A stretch of DNA of 64,000 nt, taken from positions 310,001 to 374,000 of the forward strand of contig NW_025767356.1 of NCBI RefSeq assembly GCF_003918875.1. Direction: 5' to 3'. Made by a program: the position numbers and the translations under genes. The notes beneath the pieces were generated by a model, which searched no databases, was not told the DNA's origin, and was given only the letters and a program-made list of their open reading frames with translations. This document shows positions 1-59,957 of the stretch, one piece after another. Position 1 is the stretch's first letter. Every line of letters begins with the position of its first letter. This DNA comes from Haliotis rubra (taxonomy: Eukaryota).

Positions 1-680
1 TTGATAACTGTCTGGTGCTACTGCAGTCGGTAAGGGAATGGTCTTATTTGTGATGATTTTCTTAAACTGATATATACTTGACAAAAATAGTTACGGATAT
101 ATGTAAATTTTGAAATTATGAATTATGATCTATTTATTCATTTACACCCTGATAAAATATCAATCATAAAAATACTAATATACCTAACTTATTTTGTCCA
201 GTATATATGCACCATGCTGCTGAATTACAGGTAACGTTTTAGACCGGTGGGTTGTACATGGTACAAGAGTTCATAAAGAAACATTCTATGTGATTCAGGA
301 TCAGGAAACCCAAGCGTTATGCAGTGCGGGTTGAGAGTGCGATATACCACCGTCAACATCCTGATACAGACAAGGGAGGCAACAGAGCTGCTGATGTAAC
401 GGCTATAGATGACATCAACACAGACTCTGCTGCTATCAACCAGGAACAACGTAAAGGAGCAAATGGCGGCGATTATGACACATTGTGCAGGATGTGGTCA
501 ACAGAAGACAATGTAGTTAACCAGAGGTCCGACGTGGCGTCGGTGTACAGCCATTTGTCAGGAATTGACAATCTGGGTGGTTGGACCATCGAAAACCATT
601 ACGACAGCACCGCTGTACCCATGTATGACAGGAGACCTGTTGATAATTTATATGACAGAACACATGTCCCGGATATATAG
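1..680 (+). CDS. CTL-A: 3' end (TM-exon end + cytoplasmic exon) of a type-I receptor, paralog of CTL-C
   Basis: Exon ..1-29 (LITVWCYCSR, donor GTAAGG at 30, phase 2) splices in frame to exon 299-680 (acceptor TGATTCAG): RIRKPKRYAVRVESAIYH...GDYDTL...ASVYSHL...ENHYD...YDRRPVDNLYDRTHVPDI*. This aligns along its whole length with the last exon of CTL-C (25105-25477). The ectodomain lies outside the window. Confidence 0.8.
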
Positions 681-867
681 ACATAGATATACAGTCTTAA
701 TGACGTTTTACAGTTTGAATTCTTGTCCAAATGAAAGTGAGTTATGTGAAACGCCCTGTTGGATACTATTTTATTAATATTCAAAACGGACTTAGCATGG
801 AAATGGACGTTGCAGTATGATGACGAGGGCAGCCATATCCTACACATGTAGAACGAGCCACCAACCA

Positions 868-961
868 GGGCTCTGTTTCACAAAGCTATCGTAGCGCTCC
901 GACTGTCATAAATCTATGTTACAGTATCGTAACGCTACGATAGCTTTGTGAAACAGGGACC
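868..961. mobile_element. ~95-bp palindromic MITE (PIF/Harbinger-like)
   Basis: Inverted repeats GGCTCTGTTTCACAAAGCTATCGTAGCG ... CGCTACGATAGCTTTGTGAAACAGGGAC with CAG on both sides; related element at 38083-38200. Confidence 0.6.
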
Positions 962-2730
962 AGTCGCTCATGCAAGGTAATTGGAAAGCATTACTTTACT
1001 TAGATGAAAGTCTCCAAAGTCACCTGCTTTGCGTTTTCGACCCTTGGCGTGAGATTGTGCAGCAGGAGAATGCCTGACCAAACGCTAGGTGTGTAAACAT
1101 GGATTTCCAACTAAATCGGAACATTATTGTGCTTCTATGATCATCAATTTTGACAGACACAGTGGCTTTCTCCATGTAAAGAATGCTTTTACAGAGAAAT
1201 ATTATTTCAAATATAGACGTAATTATTTTCGCTCCTGCGTTTCTGTTAGGGAGTATATAATTATTGATAAAATATAGGTTGTTTAGTACAGCGCTAGGTA
1301 CAACCAGGGCTAATGGCAGCAATCCGTCTTGTAAGTGTGGGATGGGAGGTCGGTTATGTATTGTACTGATAGAGAGAAGACAGACACTTGGATTCCGTAC
1401 TGTACATATTGATCTGATAACCACCTCGTACATTTCATGAACTTCCGACTGAATCTTATCCCAAGACGTTTAAAGTAATTGTCTTGGTAATGTTTAAGCA
1501 AAAATCCAGCTCAGGCACATAGTTTAGTAAATGTACAACTAGAAAGATTTGGGATATTTGGGAAATCATATTGATTAGTATATATCAGAACAGAACATAT
1601 TATTCTATATATAGTATCTTAATAGAGTTAATTTTATGAGATGGATGTTTATACTGTTTCTCGTTTCTTCTTTTATTCTTTATGGTGTGTGTGGTGTGGT
1701 AATAAAAACGGTTCATTTTAAATACTTACTGTCCAGCATAACAAGGTAGCTGCCTGTAGTACAATGTCTCATTCTCCGTCACTCTGCCTGGAATGACCAG
1801 TGCAATTATTAACATAGAATATTTACCACAAAATGCTAATTGCGAAGGAACGGCACACATCCTATCGGTTAACTCTGTTTCCCTGTTTCCTTATCATAAG
1901 GTCTTAGTACACTGCTTCTGTATCAGACAAGCTCTTTGCTACTGACGGTTCTGTGATACACCTGCTGACTACGGCCTTCTCTCCCTCATCAATATGTGAC
2001 ACGGGCTGTAGGCCTGGGGTTACTTGAGTGCTGGTGAAGTGACATCCATACCGGATGTTCCTAGTGACACATCAGCATCATATATAGGCTGAGAGGAGGA
2101 AACACGTCATGCATCCGCTACCCTTGATATGATATGAGAGAGGAGTTTGGAATTTGGATGTCTCCAATATGTAAACGCTTTCAACATACGCAATCTGTAT
2201 CCATAGCAGATAAACCAAACGGGGGGAAATTGTTATATTTACGCACTGAAAGTTAAAATAGACACACCATTTCAGCATCGATATACCTCCAACGTTACAT
2301 TTACCTTAATAAATACACGCATACAGAAGTTGAACTACAAATATTCAACATCGATAGTCAACGGGAGGTTACTCTAAATTTGACGGTGATGTTATCGTAG
2401 TATGCTACTTATTGCATGTTTCTGTGTTAGACTTATCATCGAAATGTTTCGTACTTGTACAACAGGATGAATAATAAATTTGTTGATTTAGCTAGTGGCT
2501 CAAGCACGGTATTGTTTAAATGACGTTAGGACATTGAAAGCTTGCTTTTCAGAGTAAAGGGAGGTAATGATTGGTCTCAACTATGGAATTGTAGCAGCTT
2601 TAAATATGGTCGTTTAGGATCGATTTCTAAGGGATGATAAGTGTGTTCGATAAAGTTTAAACTTTCTTTTCATCTAATTCGTGTTTTAATATACCCACGG
2701 CGAGCAAATCGTGGCATTGCTGAAGCGTTG

Positions 2731-2902
2731 ACTGACTGATTGACTGAGATTGATTTTACGCCGCTCTTAGCAATATTCCAGCAACATCACGGCGGGGGAC
2801 ACCAGAAATGGGCTTCACACATTGTACCCATGTGGGGATTCGAACACGGGTCTTCGGCGTGACGAGCCAACGCTTTAACCATTAGGCTACCCCACCGCCC
2901 CC
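2731..2902 (-). mobile_element. tRNA-derived SINE, family 1
   Basis: Reverse complement of head GGGGCGGTGGGGTAGCCTAATGGTTAAAGCG (A box), GTTCGAATCC (B box), tail ...GCGGCGTAAAATC and (TCAG)n; AGCGTTGA occurs on both flanks (TSD-like). Confidence 0.85.
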
Positions 2903-3464: not shown

Positions 3465-3695
3465 GGCAGTAGGGTAGCCTAATGGATAAAGCGTTCGCTA
3501 CTCACGCTGAAGACCCGGGTTCGATCCCCTACAATGTGTGAAGCCTATTTCTGGAGTCCACGTGTTATTGCTAACATATTGCTGAACGTTGCGTAAATCC
3601 ATACTCAGTCACTCACTCACTGTTAATTGTGTAACCCCGCCGTGATGTTGCTGGAATATTGCTAAAAGCGGCGTAAAACCAACCTCAGTCAGTCA
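3465..3695 (+). mobile_element. tRNA-derived SINE, family 1 (plus a second 3' fragment)
   Basis: A/B boxes (TAGCCTAATGG, GGTTCGATCCC), (ACTC)n tail; a second 3' end at ~3636-3695. Confidence 0.8.
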
Positions 3696-3713
3696 GAGTA
3701 TTTCAAGTTACAG

Positions 3714-3873
3714 TTGTTTTGGATAAGGAGCCCATTGCCTCCCCTGGAAGCCTGACCACGGTTGCAATACTGGTGACTATTATCAGCACGGTCTTCATAA
3801 TCAGTGCTGTAATCACAGCTTTGATATCATACTACTTCGATTTTGTACTGCAATTGGATTTTGTACTGGGAAG
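3714..3873 (+). pseudogene. Orphan transmembrane exon, probably from a decayed receptor gene
   Basis: Acceptor TTACAG, donor AG|GTATCG, phase 1 to phase 2 like every TM exon here. Reads VVLDKEPIASPGSLTTVAILVTIISTVFIISAVITALISYYFDFVLQLDFVLGR and contains an internal duplication (GATTTTGTACTG twice, 18 bp apart). No intact partner exons found. Confidence 0.5.
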
Positions 3874-6034: not shown

Positions 6035-9000
6035 ATGTCTCGCTGTAACGTAAACCCTATACCGCTTGTCATGAGGGTACTGATACTCCTGGACGCCAGT
6101 CACATACAGGGTACTGTCAGCCATATTTCATCAGGTGAGTAAACAATACAGTTTTATGTGTTAATAGATTGACACGACTACCTTGTGAAACCGGAGATTA
6201 CATTTCCTCCAAACATTCATGTGTCAATGCACCTATGTTTATGGATATGCTATTCGTGTTGGTTAGTGGATACAAAGGCCATTACCCATCTACGGTATCA
6301 TTAAACGGATGGATCCCAATTCATACTTGTATTGACTACTGGAACTCATTCACAAGAAATACCCAATATGTAGTGTAATTCCTATACTCGTATGCAAGTA
6401 TCATATAGGTAGCTATAACACGAGGGGTTACACAGGGGATGCATTGATTCCACTGAATTTGTGTATTCGCTTTCTTTGTGTTAAGTATGAAGAAATACCA
6501 AACATGGTGTGGTTGTCATTATATATAATTATTGTCATTTCCTGAAACTAAGTAAATGTCATTGTGTCTCTTCCTCAGTTACATTTGAATCGTCCTGTGT
6601 TGCTCTCAATTGGTCGGCAGCAGAGACAGACTGCAGCAAAAAGAACGCCACTATATTCACTTTACTGGATTTAGCTGCACCCATCGGCGGGAAAGTATTA
6701 CTGAACGCCACAGCTGAACATACCAGAATATGGATAGAGATCAATGGTAAACCTGAAACTTAACTTTCATTGTTACAATGAACTACAGGTCTAGAATTCT
6801 GTTTCGTGCGCCACCAGGCTAGAACAGTAACCCTAGTTTGCTGTAAACTGACAGTGATCAACCATTGTTGAAAACGCAACATGTATATGGTTACAAACCA
6901 CCTTTATACATTCACCGAATAGTATATTTAAACCAACAGGTACCACATGCAAGACAGCTTCCAGTGAGTCATTCCTCCCGGCAAGCTGTAGTGACACCAA
7001 CTATTATGTCTGCAAAGGGAACACAAGTACCAGTAAGTATTTTGACAGAGAGAATCCAATCACAATTTACAGGAAATGGTGTGTTTTCATGGCAATGAAT
7101 ATAGTCAGTGCGACATGCTTGTTGAACAGGGAGGGGCTGAAAGTGTTCTTATATTTCAATCTACACTGAACTCACGTATGATGATAACCATGGCATCAAC
7201 TCTCATATCAATTACATACAGTCAGACTCGGCCGATGATATATGCGTTTATATATATAATTAACAACCCGGTTAATTATGGATATACATATGCTAACATC
7301 TACACCTAACCCAGGAGGTACCACCTACATGACAGCTCACAAGTTGTCCTTCCTCCGACGAAACTGTAGTCACACAATATGTAGTGTGACACTTACCCTG
7401 TTGAGAATGTTTTGGTAAACCTTTCACAGCAGGTTTAAGTAACCGTTTGCAAACTTTCACCGAAATTATCTCTATACTATCGGAAGCTCAGGCAGGTTTC
7501 CGAAATATTTATTCAACCAGTGATCACGTATTTACTTTACAAAACTTTCGGATTTTGAAAGCTAACTTCTACAGATGTAGAAATTATTTTGGCGTTTGTA
7601 GATTTTCAAAAACTATTAAAACTAGCATATCCTGAAAGGTTTTGAACGTCATTTATAATATGTACCAGGATAACAAATCAGATGTTTCCTGTAATAACAA
7701 TTAAACACGTTACTTTTCATGTAAATCTTGAGTTAGAAAAGGAGAAAAAACAATTGCCGCCTGTCTTGATTGGGATTTTCTTTAATGATCTCTAAATTTC
7801 TATTTTCTTTTACAGTAAACACAGCTATATAAGAACTAAAGTTAAACAATTTATATTCAAGATATCATTTTAATTCTCTCACGACAATAATTCGTTGAAA
7901 CAACGCCACTATAACTAAGACGCATTTACAATATGAAACTGCTAAACATTCACAGAATACTCACAAAAACTCATTACTGACGTGATCCGACAGCAGACAA
8001 AGCTCTTGTAGGTAACTAGTCAAGGCAGCGGGATATATCTTGTCCATGTCTACACCTCGGTAACGAGACTTTGGTCGAAACGGCACTGTCCAACCACATT
8101 ACAGTGTTTTGCATATAAGGCGAGATAACGACTAAAATGTCTGCAAATGGAACACAGATACCAGATAGGTATTATGACGGAGATATTGTATCACATATTG
8201 CGACATTTAAGCATGGGCTCAAAGCGGTGATGAATCTATGAAAGAATGAGATTTGTGAACTACGTATGAAATAGCCACTGAAAACACACTGAAAACCTAT
8301 GTTTATTCCGTTGGCTAACACAGCTCGATGTGACTAGTGATAAAATCATGTAACTCCCATGACATGCCTTCAGTGGATGCAGCATGATAAATAAGATACG
8401 ACAGAAGGTTCCTATTGTGTGTCATGTTTTATCCTATATTGACAGGTCCTGATCGGTACGTACCATGTCGGGAGGGATCCGCGGACACGTCTACACAAGG
8501 TACAGGCGTTGTACACAGTTGTACTTCTCAAAATACAAATGGTGTTATGTCCGCTATGTGGTATTCACGTTGACAGGCGAAAACGAATATGTTTGGGCGA
8601 TATTGACATACAAAAACAGACTTCCTGGCATGTGCTTCAAATATTGGTAAATGATGACAAATGCAAGGCATGGAAGAACATGTATCGACGATTTCTCTTG
8701 GATCATATTTTACTCACCTTTTCCTTGGCAACTGCAAAATTACCTACCTGTAAATAGTGGGATTTTGTAGTTTTACACACAGCGGTTTACATATCTTTAC
8801 CCGAGTAAGGGGTGTCACAGTATGTTGTGCATACGTGAAGTTGCCTCCCTTGGGCTCTTCCAGCAGCTTTCCGTAGGTTTCTATTACGGAAAGGAAGCGA
8901 AGGTGCGAATGAAAGTCATATGTAGATATTATGGTCATATATCTTTTCTTATTGTCTCCCAGGGCCTTGACTGTGCTACAATATGACAATCACAAAGACA

Positions 9001-10467
9001 GGCATTTGGACGCACCATATTTAGATATTATGGTCATATATCTTTTCATTTGTGTCCCAGGGCCTTGATTGTGCTACAATATGATAATCACAAAGACAGG
9101 CATTTGGACGCACCATAGTTGTTTATACGTTGTTTCAGGATCTTCAGGGTCGACAGCACTGAATTTGTCAACGACAACCCAAGGTTCAAACAGTAAAGGT
9201 ACTATTGATGACTGTAAAACTATCTGATAGTTAATTGTGCGTATGATCATCTTGTCGACCGAGTTTAGGTTTGTACAAAATTGTTTGTGTTATTAAGTTA
9301 TACGGAATTGACAAGGGTTTTACAGTCCCGTACACTCTTTCAAAACACCGTGTAACTAAATATTGTACAATCGACTCTGCTTTTAGCAGATATTTCATAT
9401 GGACGTGGAAAGGGTTTTGTAGCTTCTTTTTACTATTTTAATATTTCGGTGAATGGGTCACACTATGATGTATGTTAAGGAGAACACTATGTATTGACAA
9501 ATCTATGTCACATTGATACAAACGACGGTCAGATTAATCACTGGTTACCGTACACCAGATTTAGACACACTTCTCCAATAAAAGTATCCATAATGAAAGA
9601 ACCTCCTATTGGATAATTCCACTGTATAATAAAATAAGGCAATATTTTTCTGCAAGATGTTTAACACATGCATCGTTTCCCACAATGAATGTGGAAATAT
9701 TTATATTGATCGCATTTTATACGTTGTCTGAGGTTTATCACAAAGTGACTGTTTACACATACCTGTTCAAGAGATCCTTAGTTTGTATTCATGTGTTTCA
9801 GTTACAGTGATCTCTGTTGTCACATGTGGGATACTGGCGCTTGTTGCTGTCACCAGTGGCCTTGGCTGCTACTTCATCCAAAGGTAAGATACCGTAATTA
9901 CTGGATAACACATGTGCGTTATTCTCGGTTGGTGACTAAATTCACAAAAAACAACATTGCTGAGAGCTAAAGTATTGATCCAATTTAATTCGAAATGTCA
10001 TTGAAAGCAAAAGACTAAATAGTGATAACACTTATATGAATACATCACTGATAATCAGTGATAACACCAGGTGTTTGTGAAACCGGCAAGCTGCTATAAG
10101 AAACATTCAAACTGACCAAACTGGTCAGCGTCCTCCTCAAACTCTCCTCCTGGGATGATTTTATGTAAAGATTTGTTACGTGTCAACCTGTGCATCAACC
10201 TGTGCATATCTTAGTGTTGGCTTATTAATTATGTTATCGTCCACCAAATATTTAGATCGTTGCTCATCCTTACATTCTAAAGATTACATTTTCAGGAAAA
10301 AACCAGCACCACTAGGAAATCATCAGGTTGTTGCACGTGAAGGACAAGCTGAAGAGCATTACTTCAGTCATCTAGAAGCTGGAAATGCTTCAGAAACCAA
10401 CAATTATGCTACGCTTCATGACCCTGCAAATATCGGACGGATATCTGCAATCCAGTTGGATGATTGA
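6035..10467 (+). CDS. CTL-B: type-I membrane protein with compact C-type-lectin-like domain (~242 aa)
   Basis: Exons: 6035-6134 (leader); 6579-6746 (ESSCVALNWSAAETDCSKKNAT...IWIEIN); 6940-7032 (GTTCKT...ASCSDTNYYVCK); 8446-8499; 9139-9198 (S/T stalk); 9802-9883 (TM VISVVTCGILALVAVTSGLGCYFI); 10296-10467 (tail HYFSHL, NNYATL). All introns GT-AG, phases consistent, 729 nt open. Confidence 0.8.
7395..7800 (+). mobile_element. Degenerate LINE reverse-transcriptase fragment
   Basis: ILSEAQAGFRNIYSTSDHVFTL matches the non-LTR RT QxGFR...STxD motif; disrupted downstream. Confidence 0.75.
8922..9117. repeat. ~97-bp local tandem duplication in CTL-B intron 4
   Basis: AGATATTATGGTCATATATCTTTTC...GGACGCACCATA occurs twice; single copy in the paralogous CTL-C intron. 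Confidence 0.8.
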
Positions 10468-26510: not shown

Positions 26511-26517
26511 GTATGTA

Positions 26518-45380: not shown

Positions 45381-48300
45381 ATGTCGGGCGGCTGTTTGTT
45401 CATAGTTATCTTTCTACTAGCAGACATCCAATCCACATATCACGAACTAGGTAAGTTGTACTCAATACTACGTATATATAAAGAGGTTAATGTTACATGG
45501 ATCGTTGGAATTGTAAGTATCCTTACAAGTTTGTATACTACTTCTGCTTCCGGGCAGAATGAGAGGATTAGCCAGCACTGTTTTGATTGACGTGAGCTTA
45601 GAATATTATAGCATGAATTTCATAATTAGGAAAGCATGGGCGTGCCCTGAAGTAGCACAACATATACAGAAATGTTTAAATGCAAGCTTCACACTGAAAC
45701 GAAATATCGATTTGTGCACATAATGTTGCATATATAGAGGGCTTATATTTTACAAAAGACGGTTGAGGAACATGCGGGTAAAATTGTATTTAGATGAAAC
45801 TTATTTCGCTTGAAACCATTAATAATGACTATCTTGGGGTACTATCTTGCCTCTCAAAGAAGTTATCTTGGGGGTAAACTGTACGGCCAGCCAGCTCCGG
45901 TTGTAGAGAAATAACCGTTTCCATTTGATGATGACGTCACCGTTCCCTGCTAAGCATTTTCACCCAAACTATATCTGCCGTTGAACCCATTCTGTGGATA
46001 CCCGTTTTACTACATGATGAATGATATTTACAACATTGCAGTTTCAACAACTCAGATCACATTCGACAGGGGAGACAACGTCACCTTGACATGCAATATC
46101 CCGTGTAACAGGAAGGTGTGTATAAATAGCCAGGGATGTTTTACCATTGTATACGTCACACAAGTTGTTTATTTTACTAATCTGCAAACTGTTGCCTGTT
46201 TCACGACTAATTTCATCTGTTAAGCTGTAAGTAACTGTACATTGTTGTCGTCAGCTTTCAGACTGAGCGAGGGTGGGTGGGGTAGCCTAGTGGTTAAAGC
46301 GTTGGCTCGTCACGTCGAAGACCCGGGTTCGAATCCCCACATGAGTACAATGTGTGAAGCCCATTTCTGGTGTCCCCTGCCGTGATGTAGCTGGAATATT
46401 GCTAAAAGCGGCGTAAAACCAAACTCAGTCAGTCAGTCAGTCAGACTGAGCGTATCAACATCGTGTCTTGCGATGTGGACACGTGACTCTCAACAACTGA
46501 ACGTGTCGTGTTAAAATAGTTCATTTAAACAAAAGATAATGAAAGAGTCATGTATGATCAAAATGTTTGATAGTTTTTAGTAACGCAATAATATCACAAG
46601 ATGTCAAAATGTCGGTTAACAATAAAGAGTTATTTCGAATGAGCTTACTTTCATCTTGATGCGGCAACAACCTCTCTCGAGGAAATGAGTTCAGGTTTTC
46701 TTTTATCGGGCATACGGGTATTGTGTAGAACACAGAATGAAACTGTAATCTAATCAGAAAAGTAAAATTTTGAACTCTGGTCATATAAATATTTGTACTT
46801 ATTCAACAAACATTTTTGTTGCAAAACAAATCTGTTTCCAAACCGTTTGTCTTCACTTGCAAGCAGCGAAATCTGTAACATTCTACACAACAGTCGATCA
46901 CCTGAGTGTCTGGTTTGTGTACAGGCCGCGTGACAGGAGGACATTGTTCAGGCAAATTGTGCAGGTGGCAGGAGCTACCGGTCAGGGCAAAACATTCTTA
47001 CCCTTTACGGGAACACCTGGTGTCATCACTGATTTTCAGTGATCCGTTTTTCTCATTCTTACGGTATTTCGCTCTTTACACCAAATGGAAGCTGTATCTG
47101 ATGATAGTCAAAACCCTGGCTATCCCTTTGCACTGACCTCGTGTATTTCCTGGACAAAAAATTGTTTGAGATTGATCATGCCTGACTCGATTGAATATCA
47201 TGTATGTTATTGTATCAACTGTCCCTCCGCCGCAGATCGGAGACACTACAGACCTACGTGTAGGTTATACACATCTGACTCTTACTTTTACCCCTTGGAT
47301 TTATTCACTATTATACTAATCATGTTTGGCATGAATTGACTTCGAAGCATTAATGCTGATATATATAACATAATTTCTCACCAATGAAGGTATTGTGGAA
47401 GCGATGGTACAACCCGGTCCCAATAGCTGTCGGCAAGAGGCTGTTCGTGAATACTCAGAAATATGCATTACAAGAGAACCACGGTGATTTTCAACTGACC
47501 GTCATATCTGCACGTCGTCCAGATGCAGGGATCTATGACTGTGTCTACAAGAACGCTAGCAGGAAGCTTGTACAGCGGTTTGAATTAACGCTCAAAGGTG
47601 ACTACGATTTGTTGTTGAATGGTGTCTTGGTCAACCTTCTTTGTCAACATGCTCTTCAATGCATATCGTCCTGTCTCTCTTGTGCAATCTAAAGCTCCTG
47701 AAGTAAAGCACTGGATTGTGTGAACCATACTCGATTATTCACAGATCGACGATTGCGATGCCATGCAGACAACTGTTTGTTTCTATTAATAGCAGGTGGT
47801 AGGGATTCTTCAAGTAGAGAAAATAAACAATTGCACAGCTTTCGTAGAGTAAAGTATGTACGCCATATTATCAAGCGTCCCTTTATTTTGCCCAGAAAGA
47901 TTGTAAACCAGCACGTTGAAGTTCACATGCTGGTCGCTGCATTCAGGAACGGTATGAGCTCAACACAGTTTATCTATCGTACTCGTTACAGGTGAAGACG
48001 CTTCTAATGAAAGCATATCAGGCATATCTGTTGCCGCAGCGTGTGGCAGAACAGCCAAACTACACTGTACCGTCAAAGTTCGCAAGCCATCCAAGGTAGG
48101 TCCTCCCTGGACAAGTACTTACTAACTATTCCCCCAACAGCATCTGGCATTATGACATTGTCAACATTTGTTTTACAGGTTATATGGATGGACAACCGGG
48201 GACTGCTTGTATCTGTTGGCAAAACAAGCTTCAGATCTAGATACAGGAGCTCTTATGACAACATAAGCAATTCCTGGCAGTTGAGGATCAGGCCCGTGAC

Positions 48301-50193
48301 CAAACACGACTTTGGACATTTTACCTGCATGGTAAAGGGTGATACCGTCATGGCTGTTGATGTGACCTTGAAAAGAAAAGGTACGTTGAATCCGTTTGGA
48401 CAAGATCTTTTAATATAATTTAAAAGTAAATAAAAACAGTGCCACACGATGGTGTTTTCTTGTTTGCATTATATAAACCGTAATTCACCGACAAACACAT
48501 GTCAATTTAACCGTCTATGTGATGTGGTGCTTATGACATATACCTGAGTTAAGGGTAGTAAATTATTTGGAAATTAAGTTAGCCTCATTTCGTATTTCCA
48601 GGAAACTCGACCTTGTGCCTCTCAAGCCCTGGGGATCACACAGAAAACAGGACTTCTCCAGCCAATGCAACACAGGCCAGTGATGAAGGTGCTATTATAT
48701 CTCATTGACATACCTCATGACTTGATAAAGTTGGTACAAGCATGAACGTGTACGGTTAATTAAATGTATGTACATTTAAATTTAAATTTAAATTTACATT
48801 TAAACACTAAATTGTGTTATGTTAACAGATACAACTCTTTCCTGGGGGGACCTTCACGCCACAGAGAAATACGACGACACAAGACAACCAGGACCTGCTG
48901 AAACTTCTCTACTTCTTCAACTCCGAACAGGTGATATATTAAATACATATTGTCACACTCTGGAGATAATCAGTGTTTAGCTTTGTCGTTTTAGGGGATT
49001 TGTTTGTGCGTTTGTTGTTCCATAATACAGGTCGCCACTAAATAGATATAACCTGGACAAACAATCAAGTGGTTGATATTATGATGAACGATCCACGGCT
49101 CCGGTCTACGAAGTAGCAGATCTGCTAAATCCGACGATAAGTATAAGAACCTGTCCTCTATTCCAACATGTTCACGTAATCCAGACATATTTATCATAGA
49201 GCTGACACAAGCATTTTGTGTCATGGATCAACGTGTCGGAAGCTAAAACTTTCCGTCGCCACTGATATTATACAAGTGATGTACAAGGTAGTAGGTAGAA
49301 CATAATATGTGTAAATGTTTAGTTGTTATATCATTGTTACACGTGGATAGTCAGTAGGTGCTTCTCATATTAATATATATATAAACGGAAATCGTATTAG
49401 TAAGCAAATCATATATATGTATATTATGGAACGTTACAACATATGTGTTAAATCTACAATAACTTGTATTTTCCCAGGTCTGGTCATTCTCGGTGTTGGG
49501 TATGCGGTGTTGTGTCAGCAGTGATCTGTGTCGTCGCTCTCTGTACTGTCAGAAGGTGTGTTGTTATTAGCATGCACTCTCTCTAACTGTCATCACTGTG
49601 TCTGAACACATTCATGAATGTCTGTCTTTATCAACAAATGGCTCATTCGCAGTTAATTTACTGGATTGCGTAAATCATATTTTGAACAAAATTTCACAAC
49701 AAAGAACGGGACAGCTAAATGCTGGAGGTCGATGTTTTACGCTGAAGGACGTAGTTTCATGTTATCTGTGCCAATTCGTCAAAATCGCTCTTATGTTGAC
49801 GAGAAGTACAATTTGATAATGGTCCGTGTCTCATGCTCCTGTGACAGAATCACCCACCTGACCAGCACTGCCCGGGGACCGGAGACCGAGAGGGAGCCCC
49901 CTCGGACTGAGGAAACATCACTGTCGAGCTCGAGGTGGCACTACAGCTTGTCTACTCCGTATGAGTCGAGATCCAGCGTGGCGCCACCTGCAACCAGGAT
50001 CAGGAACTATTGCCGTAGCAGTAGTATGGGTGCTACGACCGGCGTCCATCCCAGCGGGTGCATGTTCTCCTCCTACCCCTCCTCCGCCCCTCACCCCCTG
50101 CTTGTCCCGGGGGGCCAACACGCACCTCACGTCTCTCCACAACAGTCTGATGACGACGAAGAAGAAGAAGTGTCGGATGCAATTGCCGTGTAG
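45381..50193 (+). CDS. Ig-2: type-I receptor with two Ig domains (~423 aa if a 1-nt deletion in the TM exon is corrected)
   Basis: Exons: 45381-45450 (signal); 46042-46115 (GDNVTLTC); 47390-47597 (VLWKR...DAGIYDC); 47992-48095 (TAKLHC); 48179-48380 (VIWMD...DFGHFTC); 48602-48688; 48829-48930; 49478-49555 (TM, frameshift at GGG 49498-49500); 49848-50193 (Ser/Pro-rich tail with acidic end). Exon sizes 70/104/202 are identical to Ig-1. Confidence 0.82.
46270..46445 (+). mobile_element. tRNA-derived SINE, family 1, with TSD
   Basis: A/B boxes, (AGTC)n tail, CAGACTGAGCG on both flanks. Confidence 0.9.
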
Positions 50194-53146: not shown

Positions 53147-56100
53147 ATGGCTCGTGGGAGTATCGTTTTGCTTCTATGTGTTCTAGTTCACTGCGTTTCC
53201 ATGGTGATGATGTCAAAGATTGGTAAGTACCATTGCTGCTTAAATTAAACCTGACTCGCTGTTTGTAATGAGAAGATAATCCATGGCATATATAACATTG
53301 TTATAACATAACGATCGATGGATATATGTTTTGTAACCACGACGAATCCCGGTATAATTTTATTGTGATCCGCTGTATGTCAGCAACATCGTGATCTTGG
53401 GTTATACACAGCCAACGATCATTCTGTTTTTATTCAGCAGACCATATCCGCAACTGAAGTACTTGAGACTTCATAATATCATGATTGTGCTTTCACAATT
53501 TCGTTAAAACGTATTACTTATAACCGACATAGGCTAGTGTTATACATAACTGAACATTTTGCAGGCTCATCGTTTATCAATGTTATGCATGTACACTTTA
53601 GCAGTTAAGAACCACCCGCTTCTATCACAATACTGCATTTAATCTTCCGCACCAGGAGTATGAACGTACAGTGCAGAATGACAGATACATGTCAGGTTTT
53701 CTTACTAAAAAACTTAGGGACTAAAGGTTGATGATTCATTGAAGGCGGAAGCTGAATCTCAAACGTAAACCATTCAGAATGTGAACAATTATGTCAGAAT
53801 GTGTATGGGTGCTCTTTTACCCCAATTGACGGATTTTAACTGTCCAGCAATCTTGGTATGGTATATATATATATACGTATCCTATGAAACGTTATGTCAG
53901 AGATGGGAACTCTTTAAGAACCGCTGAATACTCAGTAACCACGTGACATTGCTTCAGTTTGTGCAACTTGTCACGTGTTCTGGAGTCTTGGTCTGAAACT
54001 TAATTGACCTTATCGTACAATGTTCTGAGACAAAATATGACAAAAGCAATTTTCATATTCCTGTAATAAGGTTTAATTTTTTACACTAGTTAATAACCCT
54101 AAATATTGTGTTCGTTGCATACATTGACTGCTATTTCTGAACGTCTGACGGAACGAATATCTGAAAACTATAGTTCCCATCAAGTAAGAACTAAGATACA
54201 GTAGAAATGACAATATGATGGATAATCAGCTCCATTATTTTCACAAAAGCGACGTTTCGGTATAGATATGTCTAACCTTGCTTGGAAACGGTATAAGATA
54301 CCGAAACGTCCCTATGTTGAAAATGAAGAAGTCGATCATCCATAAAGTTGTCATCTCTATACCACCAACTTCTAGAATGCCACTCAAACAAAATAGGATA
54401 CAGTAAGAGACATGTGCAGTACGTATCTAATATCCATGGTGATTTCCTAACATCATTATAGAGCATCCAGTTGTCATCACTTGAAATGAAATGAAACCAT
54501 TTTCCAATGACTGCCTTTTACCTATCAATAGAAATCGCGTCATCCAGCTTCCAACTGTCACGGACCAGGGCGAACATGTCCGTGGCAGAACTAGATTGTC
54601 AAACCAGGAACGGCACCTCGATACACCTTACAGACCTGAGACAGTCAACATTTCAGACATCCTTCCTGCTTGTAGCCAAACAGCTTGGCAAGGCAGTATG
54701 GCTAGGCAGAAATGGCACCAAACTTGAAGGTAAAGATGGAACTTGGTGTAAACCCTTTGTTAAAGGAGTTAAATGTTTCCACGAATTGGACTAGGATGAC
54801 AAAGTACACGACAGCATTGACTTGCAGTACATTATAATCCGATTACGTACAATACATGGTCATAACATTCAAATGAAAATGAAAGCGATCAATCCATACT
54901 ACAGTATTCATTTTACACCATCCACAGCTGGTGGTCAATGCTCCGCCTAGTACCCTGACACCCTGACACATAAAATGAAAAGTGAGTTAACCATTCTACA
55001 ATTCGTATTGTTTCACTATTCACAGCCGAAGGTCGATGCTCGGTATTATACCCGAACACTCCCGACGTTGCCAGCATAAACTCATCAGACTGTGGAGAGC
55101 TGCATCACTACATATGCTTCCAGAGCACTAACGCCAATGGTAAGTGTCTATGACCACACTGTTTTAACTGAAACGCTTAATCTTTCAATAACTGATAGAA
55201 TTCATCTGCTTAGTTGGTTTTATTTTCATTATCAAATAATCTGGTTTGGTAAATAAGTAAAACTTTGCTTGTATCACTACATCACCAGTACATATATCAT
55301 ATAAACAATATACACAAGAACTGGATACACAAAACACACAAATCAAATCATATAAAATCATGTGCCTTGAACGAATTTATGAACCTTGAGCTTGCAGTTA
55401 GATTTCATTAATTGTGTACATATATTGGTCTGGAATAATTTATCAACTCGTTTAGTCTTAAAGATGTATTGATGCAGGTACTCTATTATGTTCGTATTGA
55501 CTTTGTTGGTAGCTGGAGGTATTTCACATAACACAGTTTGGAGCCTGTGGCCATTCACATATAAATATTTTCTAACAGTAGTACTGGTGTTACTGTGTAT
55601 AACTTACATGTAAAAAGATATCGAACGATATCTTCATTGTGGTATCCACAAGCGCATTCAGAGTTGTTATAAATCTGCTTAGTTATTATCATACGGCAGA
55701 TACTAAGTACAAATGAAGTAAGGACAACAAGTAACAAATGATTGTTGAGAATGTTTTCGGACAACGCACTCGGTAAAAGCATTCACTCAAAATCACGTAG
55801 ACTGAAAAATGTCAGACACCGGAAATATGGCGCAAATCTCCAACATAACTGAAACCGAAACAACATTCGACAACGATGCGGTCGACATGACCCTGACAGT
55901 GGTCTATATATTCCCTTTACGTCAAATGAGTTTGAACAAGATCATATTGTGAGTGATTTAACAGGACAAGCAACCAACACGGTTTATGACATAATACATA
56001 AGGTAAAACATCATCTCATTTCTTAAAAGTGAAATATCCGTCCATAAACGTTTATATGAAATTCCCCCAATCAGAGCCGTCACTGATATTACTTTGTGCC

Positions 56101-59100
56101 GGAAGAGATGTGTCAATTTCGCAAAACGTTCGCCGTTCTCTGTGTAAATCTTTGCTGTGTCGATTATGGTGTGAAACAGACAGCAAGAGACACAGGGGCA
56201 CTTGGTCGATGAAGGTATACTACATATGATGCAATTACATTGTAAACTTACCATTTTTCCTTGAAGTAGTTCAATTATGCAGAACACTCGCGAATAAAGG
56301 CAAAACATTATGTTCCTTTGGGGCATGTATTACAACTGATTGATGTGTGAAATGCTGTAGCGTGACGTCCGGTTATATATGCATAGAGTACGTACCGTAC
56401 GTACATGACTCGATGTAAGTGTACAACCACGGCACACACATAGAAATGTTTGAAATAGTATGGGCCAACATGACTGTTCCTACTTCTCGTTCGATGATTG
56501 ACGTGTATGTATATAACATGTGTGCATAAGTTTATTCGTATATTTGACAGATAAAACAATGACGACAATCGTTACCGGTATCTCCAATTCCTGTGAGTAT
56601 ATTAGCTTATTCACCACCGCACGTTATCACTATCCACTTCCAATCAACACCGACACGTTCTTCATCACTATCCACCACGTCAGCCTTCATCAACACACAT
56701 CGCATCACTCCCAATCACCACCGACACCTTCTTCATCACTATCCACCACGTCAGCCTTCATCAACACACATCGCATCACTCCCAATCACCACCGACACCT
56801 TCTTCATCACTATCCACCACGTCAGCCTTCATCAACACACATCGCATCACTCCCAATCACCACCGACACCTTCTTCATCACTATCCACCACGTCAGCCTT
56901 CATCAACACACATCGCATCACTCCCAATCACCACCGACACGTTCTTCATCACTATCCACCACGTCAGCCTTCATCAACACACATCGCATCACTCCCAATC
57001 ACCACCGACACCCTCTTCATCACTATCCACCACGTCAGCCTTCATCAACACACATCGCATCACTCCCAATCACCACCGACACCCTCTTCATCACTATCCA
57101 CCACGTCAGCCTTCATCGACACACATCGCATCACTCCCAATCACCACCGACACCCTCTTCATCACTATCCACCACGTCAGCCTTCATCGACACACATCGC
57201 ATCACTCCCAATCACCACCGACACGTTCGTTATCACTATCCACCCCGGCAGATACTTCCCCTCCAGTGGCATTTGCTTACACTGCGTTCCCGTTGATGGC
57301 GTCTCCTGCATGCACATCCACACCCATCCCACTCTTACTTCATTTACCACTCCATCCCCTCCACCCCCAACCCCCAAAAGCCTTCAAACAGTTAGGTTAT
57401 GGTTCATCTGCATCTGTGTTCTGCCTGGCAATAGTGAATTTGCAGAGAGTCGTGTTTAAAGGGAGATAACTCTTTGAAATAGCTTGTGAGTTGAAGTGGC
57501 GTTATACGCTCGCTCCCATAAGACAGCAAGCTCAATGCTGATGCAATGCCTGTGTGCTATACATTGCATCTGACCTAGATCTATGACAGTTTCAATAACA
57601 CTCGCACTTGCAACATATGTCCTTGTTTGTGTGGCTTGCATTGGCCAGCATTGCTTACTTGTGACAGTTCCCCGAGAACACTGAACCCCGAGAACACGTG
57701 CCTGAACGGAACATGAAACGCTGGAGATTTAAAATGTTTGGCAGTGTTGCAGGACTTTAGGTCATCATTACTGACAAAAGTTCAATGTGTGCGTGCGTGC
57801 GTGCTCGCATGTGTGTGTTTGTGCGTGCGTGCGTGCGTGTTTTGTCTAGATTTTTATAAATTTGTAACAACAAATTCTCTTTTCTACAGCTGCTAGTTCA
57901 AGTGGACATGACTCAATAAGTAAGTTGCAGAATTATCTGACAAACATCGGGGCAATCACTGTTATCACGTGGTACTCGAACGACAGTTTCAGTCATGGCG
58001 GCTAAAATATACTGAACCTGTTGTAGTGAAACATAGTCTATTGTGCCCAATGATCTTTTCATATTTATGTTTTTTACAATATATTTTACAAGATCAAGCA
58101 GCGTATTGGTTATAAACACATCCGAGCAGGCTTCAGTATTCCTGGGATGAACGAGATCCGGACGACGAAGGCGGGATAATTCGCTTTGCAGCGAAATTAG
58201 GTGTAATGCTGCCTTAAACAGACAGACCGACAGACAGACAGATTTTATTAAATAAAGAGGCCTTGGGCCCATGATACATACTTTCTTGGTGATATATAAT
58301 AGCTGAGTAAGAATATATAGCAGTTTAGTAGGCACAGGTATGAAATTTGTAATACAATATTATATAAACAACAAATTGCATTTATTAATTGTTGGTTTTA
58401 AATGATGAGCCTTACTGTGTACCAGTGATAACTGAAGGGTTAAGTGCTTTGGGTTAATAGTGTTGGGTCTCAGTTTCCATACTTTATATAAATACAGACG
58501 TATACTATGTAGGGTAGAGACATCACAGTGTACCAGTAATAACTGCAAGACTGAGTGCTTTTAGATTAATATCCAACACTATTAAACAAACGTCCCTCAA
58601 CTCAACCATGCCTTTTTCAAAGTTTCATGTCGAGTGATTTTGTTGTGCCTTCCACTGTTCATTGTTTATGTCTATGTTACAGCGCCAGCTCACGTCATCG
58701 TCATTATATACGTCGTATGTGTCGTCATTGTCCTCGCTGTTGGTGTCGCAGTTGTCAAGTTCAGGTTAGAACGTTCCCATGATGAGAATCTGTCATGACA
58801 AAACAGAATGAAATTCAGCGACCAAGCAAAATCCTGCTCCACTAAACCCTGTTTGTTGCCGGCTTGACGTCATCAGTATGGGATTAGAGGTTCACATTCC
58901 CATACGCTTTGATGCTTCTTGATAGATGGGCGGTCGGGTAGCCGAGTGATTAAAGCGTTCGCTCGTAACGCCGAAGACAGGGGTTCGATTCCCCACATGG
59001 GTGCAATGTGTGAAGCCATTTCTGGTGTTCCCGCCGTGGGGATGGATATTGATATTGATGGAATATTACTAAAAGCGGCGTAAAGCCATACTCACTCACT

Positions 59101-59957
59101 CACTCTTGATAGAATTACAACAAAGGTCGACTGGGCACGGGTCCAGTCACATCCCCGCAACCTGACATGCGTCAATATATAAAATATCATCTTGGTTCTG
59201 ACTCAGGTTATTTCCAGATTAAACTAAAAATATATTATGTAGAGAAAGACAATGATGATAAAAGGTTAGTCCAAGTACCCCTGACACCCACCCACCCACC
59301 CTCCCCAGTACTCCTCCAACGGCGTGAACGTTGGTCATAATATCGGTCTGTGGATTGTTTGCTCTAGACTCGAGTATAAAATGGAAACAGCCATTCCAGG
59401 GTTCGGCGATAAACAACAGCGAACACTGTCTCTACAAACTCAGCGTTTAAACAGAAAATCTCAGGAATAAATATACCCCTCAATGTTTCAGGAAACATCC
59501 CATGACGTCGATGATGGTCCCCTATCGTTCGCCACCCCCTAGTCTCCCTCTCATCTATGGCGTTCAACACTCGCGCATCAGACCCCCTTTCCACAGGCGC
59601 CTCACACCACAGGTCCGAAAGTTGTCGGAGGTGAGTGAAGGGGCGGAGAATAGCCCGGGAAGTATGCTTCTCTACAACGAAGGGGCGGCCCGATCTCACG
59701 TGGGCGCTGTTGACGACATCATGTACGAGCAATACAACTTCAGCCCCGAGATAAGGGGGAACGACTGTCCGATGACGCCGGATTCGGAAACGTACACACC
59801 TCTTTTGAATCCCCCAACTGATGATGGCGACGTCACTAGTACAATCATTTTCTTTGGGCCGAACGCTCCCGTACCGACAGGTCTAACGTCACTCAATACC
59901 GATGCAGTTCTAGAGAACCCTGTCTATGAATCCTATGTTGGTAGTACGTATGTCTAG
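53147..59957 (+). CDS. CTL-D: compact C-type-lectin-like type-I receptor with NPxY/PDZ tail (~335 aa, intact)
   Basis: Exons: 53147-53222 (signal MARGSIVLLLCVLVHCVS); 54532-54729 (AELDCQTRNGTSIHLTDL...AVWLGRN); 55026-55139 (GRCSVL...DCGELHHYICF); 56551-56592; 57890-57919; 58683-58764 (TM VIVIIYVVCVVIVLAVGVAVV); 59492-59957 (YTPL, ENPVY, C-terminal STYV). 1008 nt open. Confidence 0.8.
55400..55770 (-). mobile_element. Degenerate LINE 3' fragment
   Basis: SECACGYHNEDIVRYLFTCKLY resembles a non-LTR ORF2 C-terminal Cys motif. Confidence 0.55.
56620..57245. repeat. 71-bp minisatellite, ~9 copies, intronic in CTL-D
   Basis: Direct periodicity of 71 bp (not a multiple of 3). Confidence 0.95.
58927..59105 (+). 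mobile_element. tRNA-derived SINE, family 1
   Basis: A/B boxes, (ACTC)n tail, CTTGATAGA on both flanks. Confidence 0.88.

What the first reader, a model, noticed from the sequence alone, without database searches (positions are those of the whole stretch)
1..59957. Mixed lectin / Ig / adaptor immune-receptor complex in an invertebrate genome
Seen: all eight gene models I could build in 60 kb encode single-pass membrane proteins with tyrosine-containing, non-catalytic tails: four lectin-family members, two two-Ig receptors and two near-ectodomain-less TM proteins, plus relics. I found no housekeeping gene among them. Established: vertebrates cluster C-type-lectin receptors (natural killer complex) and Ig receptors (leukocyte receptor complex) that signal via ITIM/ITSM motifs and TM adaptors. 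Inference: this is a lineage-specific, birth-and-death receptor complex combining both ectodomain classes with candidate adaptors, possibly for haemocyte recognition or allorecognition.
Basis: partly seen in the sequence, partly recalled or inferred. Interest (0 to 1): 0.9.

Follow-up and report, generated by a model that had tools for sequence, protein, structure and literature searches.

The report
Abalone lectin-like and Ig receptor gene cluster
This stretch of blacklip abalone DNA is part of a long tandem array of abalone-only cell-surface proteins (small lectin-fold receptors with tyrosine-rich tails, two Ig-domain genes and two tiny membrane proteins); the cluster is real, but nothing yet shows that it works in immunity.

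Summary
The window is Haliotis rubra contig QXJH01000649.1, 310001-374000.

- **Lectin-like genes.** Genes A (only its last exon lies in the window), B, C and D belong to one family found only in Haliotis. They are type I membrane proteins with a compact C-type-lectin-like domain (CTLD). A family profile hits only CTLDs in PDB, and an AF2 model (pLDDT 86.6) matches NKR-P1, CD69 and MBP. The long loop that carries the Ca2+/sugar site is deleted.
- **RNA support.** RNA contigs confirm gene C's splice junctions.
- **Small membrane proteins.** Two short proteins with almost no ectodomain (167 and 117 aa) are RefSeq genes.
- **Ig genes.** The minus-strand two-Ig gene is a RefSeq gene of 424 aa. The plus-strand two-Ig gene has four good Ig exons, but its membrane exon does not join in frame.
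- **Gene C.** Its exon 2 has a 1-base deletion in the reference. RefSeq merges B and C into one locus with chimeric isoforms.
- **Extent.** The CTLD array continues at least 50 kb upstream.

The vertebrate analogy is weak. There is one strict ITIM, and it is not conserved. There is no ITAM and no charged transmembrane residue. The receptors are type I, and the Ig domains are split across exons as in adhesion molecules. Immune function was not tested. The closest mollusc analogues are the Biomphalaria GRC/PTC2 clusters. The scan has noted several similar lectin-plus-tyrosine-tail clusters elsewhere in this genome.

The parts
297..680 (+). Last (tail) exon of gene A, a 311-aa RefSeq gene spanning window -2890..680. 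It encodes the 127-aa tail with seven tyrosines, including SVYSHL.
   Evidence: Gene call. 44% identical to the gene C tail. Seven invariant Tyr in the family alignment. Gene A's CTLD exons lie at contig 307.6k and 309.0k.
6035..10467 (+). Gene B, which is LOC124257045 isoform X7 (242 aa). Exons: 6035-6134 leader, 6579-6746 and 6940-7032 compact CTLD, 8446-8499 and 9139-9198 stalk, 9802-9883 TM, 10296-10467 short 55-aa tail.
   Evidence: Exact, unique GT-AG mapping of P0004. AF2 model of residues 26-135 with pLDDT 86.6. Foldseek hits are all CTLDs.
18803..25477 (+). Gene C. Exons: leader 18803-18904, exon 2 21657-21829 (1-nt deletion near 21776 in the reference), exon 3 22034-22126, 23360-23413/19, 24575-24634, TM 24871-24952 (GG acceptor in the reference), tail 25105-25477 (124 aa, seven Tyr).
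   Evidence: RefSeq isoforms X1-X6 mapped. RNA contig joints. Frameshift seen in the B/C alignment.
30398..32301 (+). LOC124257048 (167/163 aa). It has a ~23-aa N-terminal ectodomain, a TM segment, a juxtamembrane CITCR motif and a ~115-aa tail with four Tyr. Exons: 30398-30479(67), 31319-31403, 31965-32301.
   Evidence: Exact mapping of P0038 and P0035. Orthologues in H. asinina and H. cracherodii at 59-72% identity. Gene call.
33229..34479 (+). A 117-aa RefSeq gene. It has a ~7-aa ectodomain, a TM segment and a ~90-aa tail with five Tyr. Exons: 33229-33311 and 34209-34479.
   Evidence: Gene call. Only one two-exon GT-AG solution gives 117 aa.
36620..42857 (-). Ig(-) gene (RefSeq, 424 aa). 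My reading of the exons: Ig1 first half ends 42737, Ig1 second half 42469-42253, Ig2 first half starts 41666, Ig2 second half ~40364-40165, Thr-rich stalk 39581-39492, TM 37937-37853, tail 37085-36620. The leader exon was not located.
   Evidence: Gene call with Ig_3, I-set and V-set. Pfam hits on the exon pieces. Splice phases. Profile hits to Ig-superfamily chains.
46000..50193 (+). Ig(+) gene, paralogue of Ig(-). Exons: Ig1 first half ends 46115, Ig1 second half 47390-47597, Ig2 first half 47992-48095, Ig2 second half 48179-48380, candidate stalk 48602-48688. The 3' end is unresolved: a hydrophobic exon at 49478-49555 and an ORF at 49657-50190.
   Evidence: Splice phases are consistent through the Ig exons. 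33-41% identical to the Ig(-) exons. A stop appears if the hydrophobic exon is entered in phase 1. I could not retrieve any annotation for this gene.
53147..59957 (+). Gene D, a divergent compact-CTLD receptor. Exons: leader 53147-53222, CTLD 54532-54729 and 55026-55139, TM 58683-58764, tail 59492-59957 (154 aa, nine Tyr, with NPVY and YTPL). Stalk exons were not located. A 71-mer satellite lies in an intron.
   Evidence: Family HMM hits. Splice sites share the phases of B and C, and the TM exon is 82 nt as in B and C. Motifs.

Best explanation
The window is the distal part of a tandem array of at least 110 kb in Haliotis rubra. The genes are abalone-specific and encode single-pass surface proteins.

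**The core family.** It is a type I receptor built from a signal peptide, one (sometimes two) compact C-type-lectin-like domain without the long Ca2+/sugar-binding loop, a Ser/Thr-rich stalk and a transmembrane segment encoded by an 82-nt exon. One of several unrelated cytoplasmic tails follows.
- Genes A and C carry a conserved ~125-aa tail with seven invariant tyrosines, mostly in 'YD' contexts.
- Gene B has a short tail.
- Gene D has a third kind of tail, with NPxY and YxxL.

**Other genes in the array.** These are two small membrane proteins that are almost all tail, and a divergently oriented pair of two-Ig genes.

**Most likely working (inferred, not shown).** The compact CTLDs bind protein or glycan ligands through their surface, as non-sugar-binding CTLDs do. 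The tails, once tyrosine-phosphorylated, dock SH2/PTB proteins. The array grows and decays by tandem duplication, tail swapping and loss. Which cells use it, and for what kind of recognition (pathogen, self, or other), is unknown.
For: - **Identity and annotation:**
- **Exact exon maps:**
- **RNA splice joints for gene C:**
- **CTLD fold.** All 37 profile hits in PDB are CTLDs, best E 2.4e-5, with a ~30-residue gap at the long loop. The AF2 model has pLDDT 86.6 and pTM 0.78. The top 50 PDB and top 30 Swiss-Prot Foldseek hits are all CTLDs, TM 0.54-0.64. Atlas features agree.
- **Restricted to Haliotis:**
- **Array continues upstream:**
- **Gene D belongs to the family:**
- **Seven invariant Tyr** across paralogues and four species, at 44% overall identity.
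- **Ig exons:**
- **Tandem duplication of B and C:**
- **Chance (inference).** Four unrelated families, all single-pass, side by side. If about 11% of gastropod genes are single-pass (PMC7494358), the chance is about 0.11^4.
Against: - No ligand, expression pattern or phosphorylation was tested, and the tissue origin of the RNA runs is hidden.
- Pfam Lectin_C is below its cut-off in every member.
- The tails match no known family.
- Motif content is thin: one non-conserved ITIM, no ITAM, no YxN.
- Gene C is frameshifted in the reference, and the 3' end of Ig(+) does not close in frame, so part of the array may be decaying.
- The Ig genes and the small membrane proteins may be unrelated neighbours rather than working partners. 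Nothing links them to the CTLD genes except position.
Confidence: 0.65

Rival explanations
1. The cluster is an immune receptor complex in the strict sense proposed by the reader. On this reading, haemocyte receptors act as inhibitory/activating pairs through ITIM/ITSM tails and transmembrane adaptors, like the NKC and LRC. A related version is a pathogen-interaction cluster like the Biomphalaria GRC/PTC2.
For: - B and C have near-identical ectodomains but different tails.
- Gene A's tail has a strict ITIM, SVYSHL.
- LOC124257048 has the build of LAT-type adaptors: a short ectodomain, a conserved juxtamembrane CxxC and a Tyr-bearing tail. Atlas features place it near LIME1 (0.93) and SCIMP (0.90).
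- The closest structural matches of the CTLD are NK-cell receptors.
- Gastropod clusters of single-pass genes control parasite resistance (PMC7494358).
- Many differences from the reference appear in DNA and RNA contigs, including an in-frame 3-nt deletion in the gene C tail exon.
Against: - The ITIM is not conserved (PVYGHS in H. cracherodii, AVYSHL in H. asinina).
- There is no strict ITSM, no ITAM, and no charged TM residue for adaptor pairing.
- The orientation is type I.
- The Atlas neighbours of LOC124257048 are mixed (SMIM33, TMIE, opalin, stannin), and the tool itself warns that the family is probably wrong.
- There are no expression or challenge data.
- The likeness to NK receptors is expected for any CTLD that lacks the Ca2+ loops.
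Confidence: 0.25
2. These are cell-adhesion or developmental recognition molecules with no immune role, for example in neurons, epithelia, gametes or larval settlement. The Ig pair would be IgCAM-like, and the CTLD receptors would resemble layilin or chondrolectin, which are type I CTLD proteins.
For: - The best PDB matches of the Ig profile are titin, DSCAM, Robo, contactins and DIP/Dpr.
- Each Ig domain is split over two exons, as in NCAM-type genes (the NCAM comparison is from my own knowledge).
- If read in the only frame that joins, Ig(+) ends in a short hydrophobic C-terminus, as GPI-anchored IgCAMs do.
- Type I orientation with NPxY/YxxL tails is also typical of adhesion and engulfment receptors.
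Against: - Restriction to Haliotis, rapid tail turnover and tandem copy-number change are unusual for core adhesion molecules, which are normally conserved across phyla.
- No expression data point either way.
Confidence: 0.25
3. The array is mostly decaying: young, taxon-restricted genes drifting toward pseudogenes, transcribed but with little function.
For: - Frameshift in C exon 2.
- GG instead of AG at the acceptor of the C transmembrane exon.
- Ig(+) does not close in frame.
- Between B and C exons 2-3, 16 of 19 substitutions change the protein (my count). That is close to what no constraint would give.
Against: - The seven tail tyrosines and the CTLD cysteines are invariant across four species and across paralogues.
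- LOC124257048 is 59-72% conserved across species.
- Gene C is spliced and expressed, and the X2 transcript carries one more letter than the reference within exon 2.
- Exons are more alike than most introns between B and C.
Confidence: 0.1

Closest known systems
Biomphalaria glabrata GRC (PTC1) and PTC2 clusters of polymorphic single-pass transmembrane genes (Tennessen et al. 2020, PMC7494358)
   Same: Both are gastropod clusters made almost only of lineage-specific single-pass membrane genes of about 120-530 codons, with no recognisable catalytic domain. The Biomphalaria clusters are proposed to act as cell-surface recognition molecules.
   Different: I did not test sequence homology. In the snail, hyperdivergent haplotypes and a resistance phenotype define the clusters, and neither is shown here. 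The paper's main text nowhere uses the word 'lectin' and uses 'immunoglobulin' only once, in a general remark.
Vertebrate natural killer gene complex receptors (group V CTLDs: NKR-P1/KLRB1, CD69, CLEC5A)
   Same: They are the best structural matches (TM 0.57-0.62). They also have a CTLD without a Ca2+/sugar site, clustered paralogues, and ectodomains paired with different tails.
   Different: NKC receptors are type II, with the tail at the N-terminus, and keep a ~120-residue CTLD. The abalone domain is about 90 residues with the long loop deleted, and it sits in a type I protein. Sequence identity is only 15-22%. There is no conserved ITIM and no charged TM residue. This is convergent architecture, not orthology.
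Type I CTLD membrane proteins (layilin, chondrolectin, CD302)
   Same: They have the same order of parts: signal peptide, single CTLD, transmembrane segment and a short tyrosine-bearing tail. This comparison rests on my own knowledge and was not tested here.
   Different: Those are conserved single-copy vertebrate genes with full-length CTLDs. None appears among the best fold hits.
Transmembrane adaptor proteins of the LAT/LIME/SCIMP type
   Same: LOC124257048 and the 117-aa protein have a very short ectodomain, one TM segment and a tyrosine-bearing tail. LOC124257048 also has a juxtamembrane CxxC.
   Different: There is no sequence homology (no Pfam hit) and no YxN or other defining docking motif. 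Protein-language-model neighbours are mixed. The resemblance is in build only.
IgCAM-type two-Ig proteins (DIP/Dpr, IgLON, JAM-like)
   Same: They have I-set/V-set domains with the DxGxYxC signature, domains split over two exons, and strong profile matches.
   Different: Ig(-) has a 154-aa cytoplasmic tail with no match to any family. No orthologue was identified.

Membership tests
C-type lectin-like domain (CTLD) superfamily | CTLD fold (two helices plus beta sheets, N- and C-termini adjacent) | tested here: met
   AF2 model of P0004:26-135 has pLDDT 86.6 and pTM 0.78. The top 50 PDB and top 30 Swiss-Prot Foldseek hits are all CTLDs, probability 1.00, TM 0.54-0.64.
C-type lectin-like domain (CTLD) superfamily | Sequence signature: conserved cysteines C1-C4 and a WIGL-like strand | tested here: met
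   The family alignment keeps W..A...C, IWI, G.C, F....C and HY.C. The family profile hits only CTLD chains in PDB (37 of 37, best E 2.4e-5).
C-type lectin-like domain (CTLD) superfamily | Pfam Lectin_C (PF00059) above its gathering score | tested here: not met
   No hit for P0001 even at E<=10. Six of 15 members hit weakly, best E 7.9e-4, so none passes as a called domain.
Ca2+-dependent carbohydrate-binding C-type lectins | Long-loop region carrying EPN/QPD and WND motifs | tested here: not met
   The HMM alignments to DEC-205 CTLDs show a ~30-residue deletion exactly between the WIGL strand and the C3 cysteine. The domain is about 90 residues.
NK gene complex (group V) receptors | Type II orientation with an N-terminal cytoplasmic tail | tested here: not met
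   The order in P0004 and P0025 is N-terminal leader, CTLD, stalk, TM, C-terminal tail.
ITIM-bearing inhibitory receptors | Conserved [S/I/V/L]xYxx[I/V/L] in the tail | tested here: inconclusive
   There is one strict match (gene A, SVYSHL). Gene C has TVYSHL, H. asinina AVYSHL and H. cracherodii PVYGHS, so only V-Y-x-H is invariant. SHP binding was not tested.
ITAM / DAP12-FcRgamma type adaptor pairing | YxxL/I-x6-12-YxxL/I in the adaptor, and opposite charges in the TM segments | tested here: not met
   No ITAM pattern in any tail. No charged residue inside any of the six TM segments read.
LAT-type transmembrane adaptors | Short ectodomain, juxtamembrane CxxC, and multiple docking tyrosines (YxN and others) | tested here: inconclusive
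   LOC124257048 has a ~23-aa ectodomain, a CITCR/CLICR motif conserved in three species, and invariant Tyr in SPYH, GYAKPF and WYDTD. It has no YxN and no Pfam hit. Atlas neighbours are mixed.
Immunoglobulin superfamily | Ig domain signature (C...W...DxGxYxC) and HMM matches | tested here: met
   Four exon pieces hit V-set, I-set and ig with E 1e-4 to 1e-2. Their profile hits more than 3000 Ig-superfamily chains, down to E 3e-15. RefSeq Ig(-) has Ig_3 on record.
Leukocyte receptor complex type Ig receptors | One exon per Ig domain, and ITIM tails or a charged TM residue | tested here: not met
   Each domain is split by a phase-0 intron before the V-x-W strand. The Ig(-) tail has no Yxx[LIV] at all.
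Gastropod polymorphic TM1 clusters (GRC/PTC2) | A run of single-pass genes with hyperdivergent haplotypes linked to a resistance phenotype | not testable with these tools
   The run of single-pass genes is present. Contigs of other runs differ from the reference by about 1-6% locally. Haplotype structure and phenotype cannot be assessed here.

The most novel reading that the evidence does not exclude
B and C may not simply be two genes. They may form one transcription unit in which alternative ectodomain cassettes are spliced onto a shared downstream transmembrane-plus-seven-tyrosine-tail cassette. RefSeq isoforms X3 and X5 join B exons 1-5 to the C transmembrane and tail exons. X1, X2 and X4 join B exon 2 to C exon 3. 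X7 keeps B's own short tail. One promoter would then yield the same recognition domain with either a short tail or a long signalling tail. This would be a 'paired receptor' made by splicing across tandem paralogues, in the manner of protocadherin or UGT1 variable and constant exons.
Probability: 0.2. Interest if true: 0.75.

Novelty: new variant of a known kind. Interest (0 to 1): 0.45.

Why it matters
Molluscs lack the vertebrate receptor families, and how their cells recognise pathogens, self or partners is largely unknown. In snails, clusters of anonymous single-pass membrane genes are the strongest known resistance loci. This abalone locus gives such a cluster a recognisable anatomy: a minimal CTLD on a type I stalk, a conserved seven-tyrosine tail, and neighbouring Ig and tail-only genes. 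It also offers concrete reagents to test, namely the ectodomains for ligand screens and the tails for SH2/PTB pull-downs. Abalone are farmed and suffer from herpesvirus and Vibrio disease, so a link to resistance would be useful. Without expression or polymorphism data, it remains one well-documented example of a gene-family pattern that appears to be common in this genome.

Tried and rejected
- **Pfam on single exons.** This gave nothing for the lectin or tail exons. The fold had to be reached through a RefSeq homologue, a family profile and AF2.
- **A longer CTLD exon.** I first thought the open frame at 6858-7032 (reading ...ENATCIWLQ...) was a longer CTLD exon. It cannot be joined in frame to exon 2. 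Both the RefSeq proteins and the RNA joint 21829>22036 use the downstream acceptor (6940 in B, 22034 in C), so I rejected it.
- **RNA runs as stray DNA.** I suspected the 'RNA?' runs were low-coverage DNA because they held 6-12% of the words in two regions. The depth profile (exons only) and the GT..AG joints show they are RNA.
- **Retrieving the Ig(+) and D proteins.** This was not possible. The length window of the word-indexed search excludes them, and the spliced products have no reference.
- **Closing the Ig(+) frame.** Searching for a phase 1-to-2 stalk exon gave no credible candidate. Aligning the Ig(+) and Ig(-) transmembrane exons was uninformative.
- **The look-up of encoding contigs with isoform X7.** This failed because only the longest isoform is indexed. 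X1 worked.
- **tRNA scan.** It found nothing, so the 165-bp SINE-like repeat is not a recognisable tRNA.

Full report
**Where the window comes from**

An exon search returned Haliotis proteins. One of them, P0004 (XP_046546981.1, LOC124257045 isoform X7, Haliotis rubra), maps to the window at 100% identity with a single GT-AG solution. Looking up its longest isoform placed the window on contig QXJH01000649.1 of assembly GCA_003918875.1. Window position 1 is contig position 310001.

The window has about 40% G+C and one N gap at 62398-62662, which I left alone. It holds several satellites and two short interspersed repeats.

**The lectin-like genes**

*Gene B.* It has seven exons: leader 6035-6134, CTLD 6579-6746 and 6940-7032, stalk 8446-8499 and 9139-9198, transmembrane 9802-9883, and tail 10296-10467.

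*Gene C.* It is a tandem copy. The two copies share 80-91% DNA identity over 6421-9298 and 21519-24717. C has its own leader at 18803-18904 and a different, long tail. That tail is 44% identical to the tail exon of gene A at 297-680.

*Gene D (53147-59957).* I saw no annotation for it. It has a leader, two CTLD exons, an 82-nt transmembrane exon and a tail exon, with the same intron phases as B and C. An HMM built from the family hits its two CTLD exons at E 4.6e-7 and 2e-4 among 1963 open pieces of the window. Nothing else in the window scores apart from B and C.

*Gene A.* It is a 311-aa RefSeq gene whose last exon alone lies in the window.

**Is the domain a lectin domain?**

Single exons and whole proteins stay below Pfam's Lectin_C cut-off. 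Lectin_C is nonetheless the family that most members touch: 6 of 15, best E 7.9e-4.

- A profile of 15 ectodomains hits 37 PDB sequences at E<=10, and all are CTLDs. They include DEC-205, mannose receptor, NKR-P1B, PLA2R, REG4, snaclecs, tetranectin, CD94 and CD69. The best E is 2.4e-5.
- The printed alignments show a gap of about 30 residues exactly where the long loop sits, which carries the Ca2+ and sugar site.
- AlphaFold2 on the same alignment gives a confident model (pLDDT 86.6, pTM 0.78).
- Its 50 best PDB matches and 30 best Swiss-Prot matches are all CTLDs, led by NKR-P1, CD69, CLEC5A and MBP, with TM 0.54-0.64.
- Protein-language-model neighbours agree.

So the fold is a CTLD, in a compact form of about 90 residues. 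Sugar binding of the classical kind is excluded. The receptors are type I.

**How restricted the family is, and how far the array runs**

An exhaustive HMMER scan of 1.84 billion cluster representatives found 16 proteins at E<=0.001. Every one that was looked up is from Haliotis: H. rubra, H. rufescens, H. asinina or H. cracherodii.

Upstream of the window on the same contig and strand, family-HMM hits mark six more compact-CTLD exon pairs, at contig 261k, 272.7k, 281k, 293.3k, 300.7k and 307.6k. They lie inside RefSeq genes of 475, 161, 301, 312 (two domains) and 311 aa. With B, C and D, that makes nine domains over about 105 kb.

The H. rufescens members looked up are nearly all on one 6.19-Mb contig, so the cluster predates the species split.

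**RNA evidence**

I laid two small runs on 21000-25900. They cover only the gene C exons, not the introns, and show these joints:
- 22126>23360 (GT..AG)
- 23411>24573 (GT..AG)
- 24951>25104 (GT..AG)
- 24633>24870 (the skipped stretch does not end in AG on the reference)
- 21829>22036 (exon 2 to exon 3)

In the reference, that exon lacks one A in the run near 21776 compared with B. This breaks the frame.

The X2 contig has 135 letters over the 134 reference letters 21696-21829 (table 8). Its other differences are not the B/C differences. So it is a C allele with one extra letter. I could not see where the letter lies. If it is in the A-run, the reference carries a null allele or an assembly slip. 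This step is inferred.

All four runs, DNA and RNA, also differ from the reference by an in-frame 3-nt deletion at 25214 and by several substitutions in the tail exon.

**What RefSeq does with B and C**

RefSeq calls one locus with seven isoforms:
- X7 is B alone.
- X6 is the C leader joined to C exon 3, skipping the broken exon 2.
- X1, X2 and X4 join B exons 1-2 to C exons 3-7.
- X3 and X5 join B exons 1-5 to the C transmembrane and tail exons.

The small variants are confirmed or suggested by RNA. The alternative acceptor at 24871, which is GG in the reference, is the one my RNA contig uses. So the models rest on reads.

Whether the B-to-C junctions are real cannot be decided here. B and C exon 5 differ at only 2 of 60 positions, and the exon 2 ends are alike. 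Reads could therefore have been placed on the wrong paralogue. My single read-laying run could not span 15 kb. I keep this as the novel case.

**The tails**

The A/C-type tail is conserved across paralogues and four species, with seven invariant tyrosines. The motif contexts are:
- KYAVR
- YH.QHPD
- G[DE]YD.LC
- VY.H
- EN.YD
- P.YDR[RK]PVD
- [IL]YDR.H

Only gene A has a strict ITIM (SVYSHL). At the same site the other sequences read TVYSHL, AVYSHL and PVYGHS, so the ITIM is not the conserved feature. No tail in the window has an ITAM or YxN.

Gene D has NPVY and YTPL. Gene B has a 55-aa tail with one YxxL. No transmembrane segment holds a charged residue. The tails hit no Pfam family.

The tails therefore look like phosphotyrosine docking modules of an undescribed kind. 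That they are phosphorylated is inference.

**The two small proteins**

*LOC124257048.* It is 167/163 aa, with exons 30398-30479(67), 31319-31403 and 31965-32301. It has a ~23-residue N-terminus outside the membrane, one transmembrane segment, a juxtamembrane CITCR and a 115-aa tail. H. asinina and H. cracherodii have orthologues at 72% and 59% identity. These keep the CxxC and the tyrosines in SPYH, GYAKPF and WYDTD.

*The 117-aa gene.* It has one possible two-exon structure, 33229-33311 plus 34209-34479.

Both have the build of LAT-type adaptors. Atlas puts LOC124257048 near LIME1 and SCIMP, but equally near SMIM33, TMIE, opalin and stannin, and the tool flags the family as probably wrong. 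Nothing ties them functionally to their neighbours.

**The Ig genes**

Four exon pieces hit V-set, I-set and ig below threshold. Aligned together, they share V.W, Y, L.I, D.G.Y.C and a terminal KG. Their profile hits more than 3000 Ig-superfamily chains, led by titin, DSCAM, CEACAM, Robo, contactins and DIP/Dpr.

In both genes each Ig domain is split by a phase-0 intron just before the V-x-W strand and ends in phase 1.

*Ig(-).* It is a RefSeq gene of 424 aa with Ig_3, I-set and V-set on record. I read a Thr-rich stalk exon, an 85-nt transmembrane exon (37937-37853) and a 154-aa tail (37085-36620).

*Ig(+).* It is sound through its four Ig exons. Its hydrophobic exon (49478-49555, 78 nt) ends in a stop after 15 residues when entered in phase 1. 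The frame that gives a transmembrane segment plus the 49657-50190 tail needs phase 2, and I found no exon that supplies it. Three readings remain open:
- the gene encodes a short, possibly lipid-anchored form;
- the exon is frameshifted in this assembly;
- an exon that I missed corrects the phase.

**Other content**

I scanned twenty further open pieces. They included the largest non-satellite ORFs, the first-half Ig exons, the Ig(-) tail exon, the Ig(+) tail ORF, the tail exons of the two small genes, and D's second CTLD exon. None gave a Pfam domain. No Pfam family is on record for any of the RefSeq-called genes I saw between contig 247k and 352k, other than the Ig families on Ig(-). No housekeeping gene is apparent.

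**Judgement**

The cluster is more than chance: four unrelated families side by side, all single-pass.

The mapping onto NKC/LRC signalling is not. The defining features I could test were type II orientation, conserved ITIM/ITSM, ITAM adaptors, charged transmembrane pairing and one-exon Ig domains. They are either absent or not conserved.

The nearest known thing in molluscs is the Biomphalaria GRC/PTC2 type of single-pass gene cluster (PMC7494358). It is defined by haplotype hyperdiversity and a resistance phenotype, and neither can be assessed here. An adhesion or developmental role is equally open.

Earlier notes of this scan list several other lectin-plus-tyrosine-tail clusters elsewhere in this genome. 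This locus is therefore one instance of a recurrent pattern rather than a singular complex.

Noticed in passing
window 11597-17374: A 5.6-kb satellite of a 48-bp unit (about 116 copies, 94% alike) with strong negative GC skew. It lies between gene B and the gene C leader, inside the 15-kb 'intron' of the chimeric RefSeq isoforms.
   Followed up: no
window 6747-6939 vs 21830-22033: Intron 2 of B and C is only 1.6% diverged (3 of 189). The two CTLD exons beside it differ by 7.2% and 8.6%, almost all protein-changing, and other introns differ by 5-21%. Possible causes are a gene-conversion tract, a conserved element, or selection on the exons. This is unexplained.
   Followed up: partly
window 24869-24871: The acceptor of the C transmembrane exon is GG in the reference (AG in gene B). 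The RNA contig of run X2 and RefSeq isoforms X1-X3 still start the exon there. A canonical AG six bases downstream is used by X4 and X5.
   Followed up: partly
window 9802-9883, 24871-24952, 58683-58764: The transmembrane exons of B, C and D are all exactly 82 nt. Each is entered in phase 1 and left in phase 2, right after the basic stop-transfer residue, even though the tails that follow are unrelated. This layout makes tail swapping by exon shuffling easy.
   Followed up: partly
window 2734, 3465, 19814, 30081, 41760, 46276, 51561, 58930 (about 165 bp each); 28861, 40459, 62125 (about 250 bp each): Two families of short interspersed repeats, 75-94% alike, sit in the introns and spacers of the cluster. 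ARAGORN finds no tRNA in the window.
   Followed up: partly
window 25667-26053: A ~390-bp stretch just after the end of gene C matches its own reverse complement at 80%. Word depth there is very high in the DNA runs. It is probably a hairpin-forming mobile element (MITE-like).
   Followed up: no
window 56635-57251: A 71-bp tandem repeat (8.7 copies, 97% alike) inside an intron of gene D creates long open frames of 258-288 aa that are almost certainly not coding.
   Followed up: no
window 3677-3880 and 3944-5477: A transmembrane-like open frame (…VAILVTIISTVFIISAVITALI…) sits directly before a 1.5-kb 24-mer satellite, between genes A and B, with no RefSeq gene call. It may be a relic exon.
   Followed up: no
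window 25214 and 25235-25419: All four runs laid (two RNA, two DNA) lack 3 nt at 25214 and carry four substitutions in the exon that encodes the gene C tail. The reference allele of the tail is therefore not the one seen in these data.
   Followed up: no
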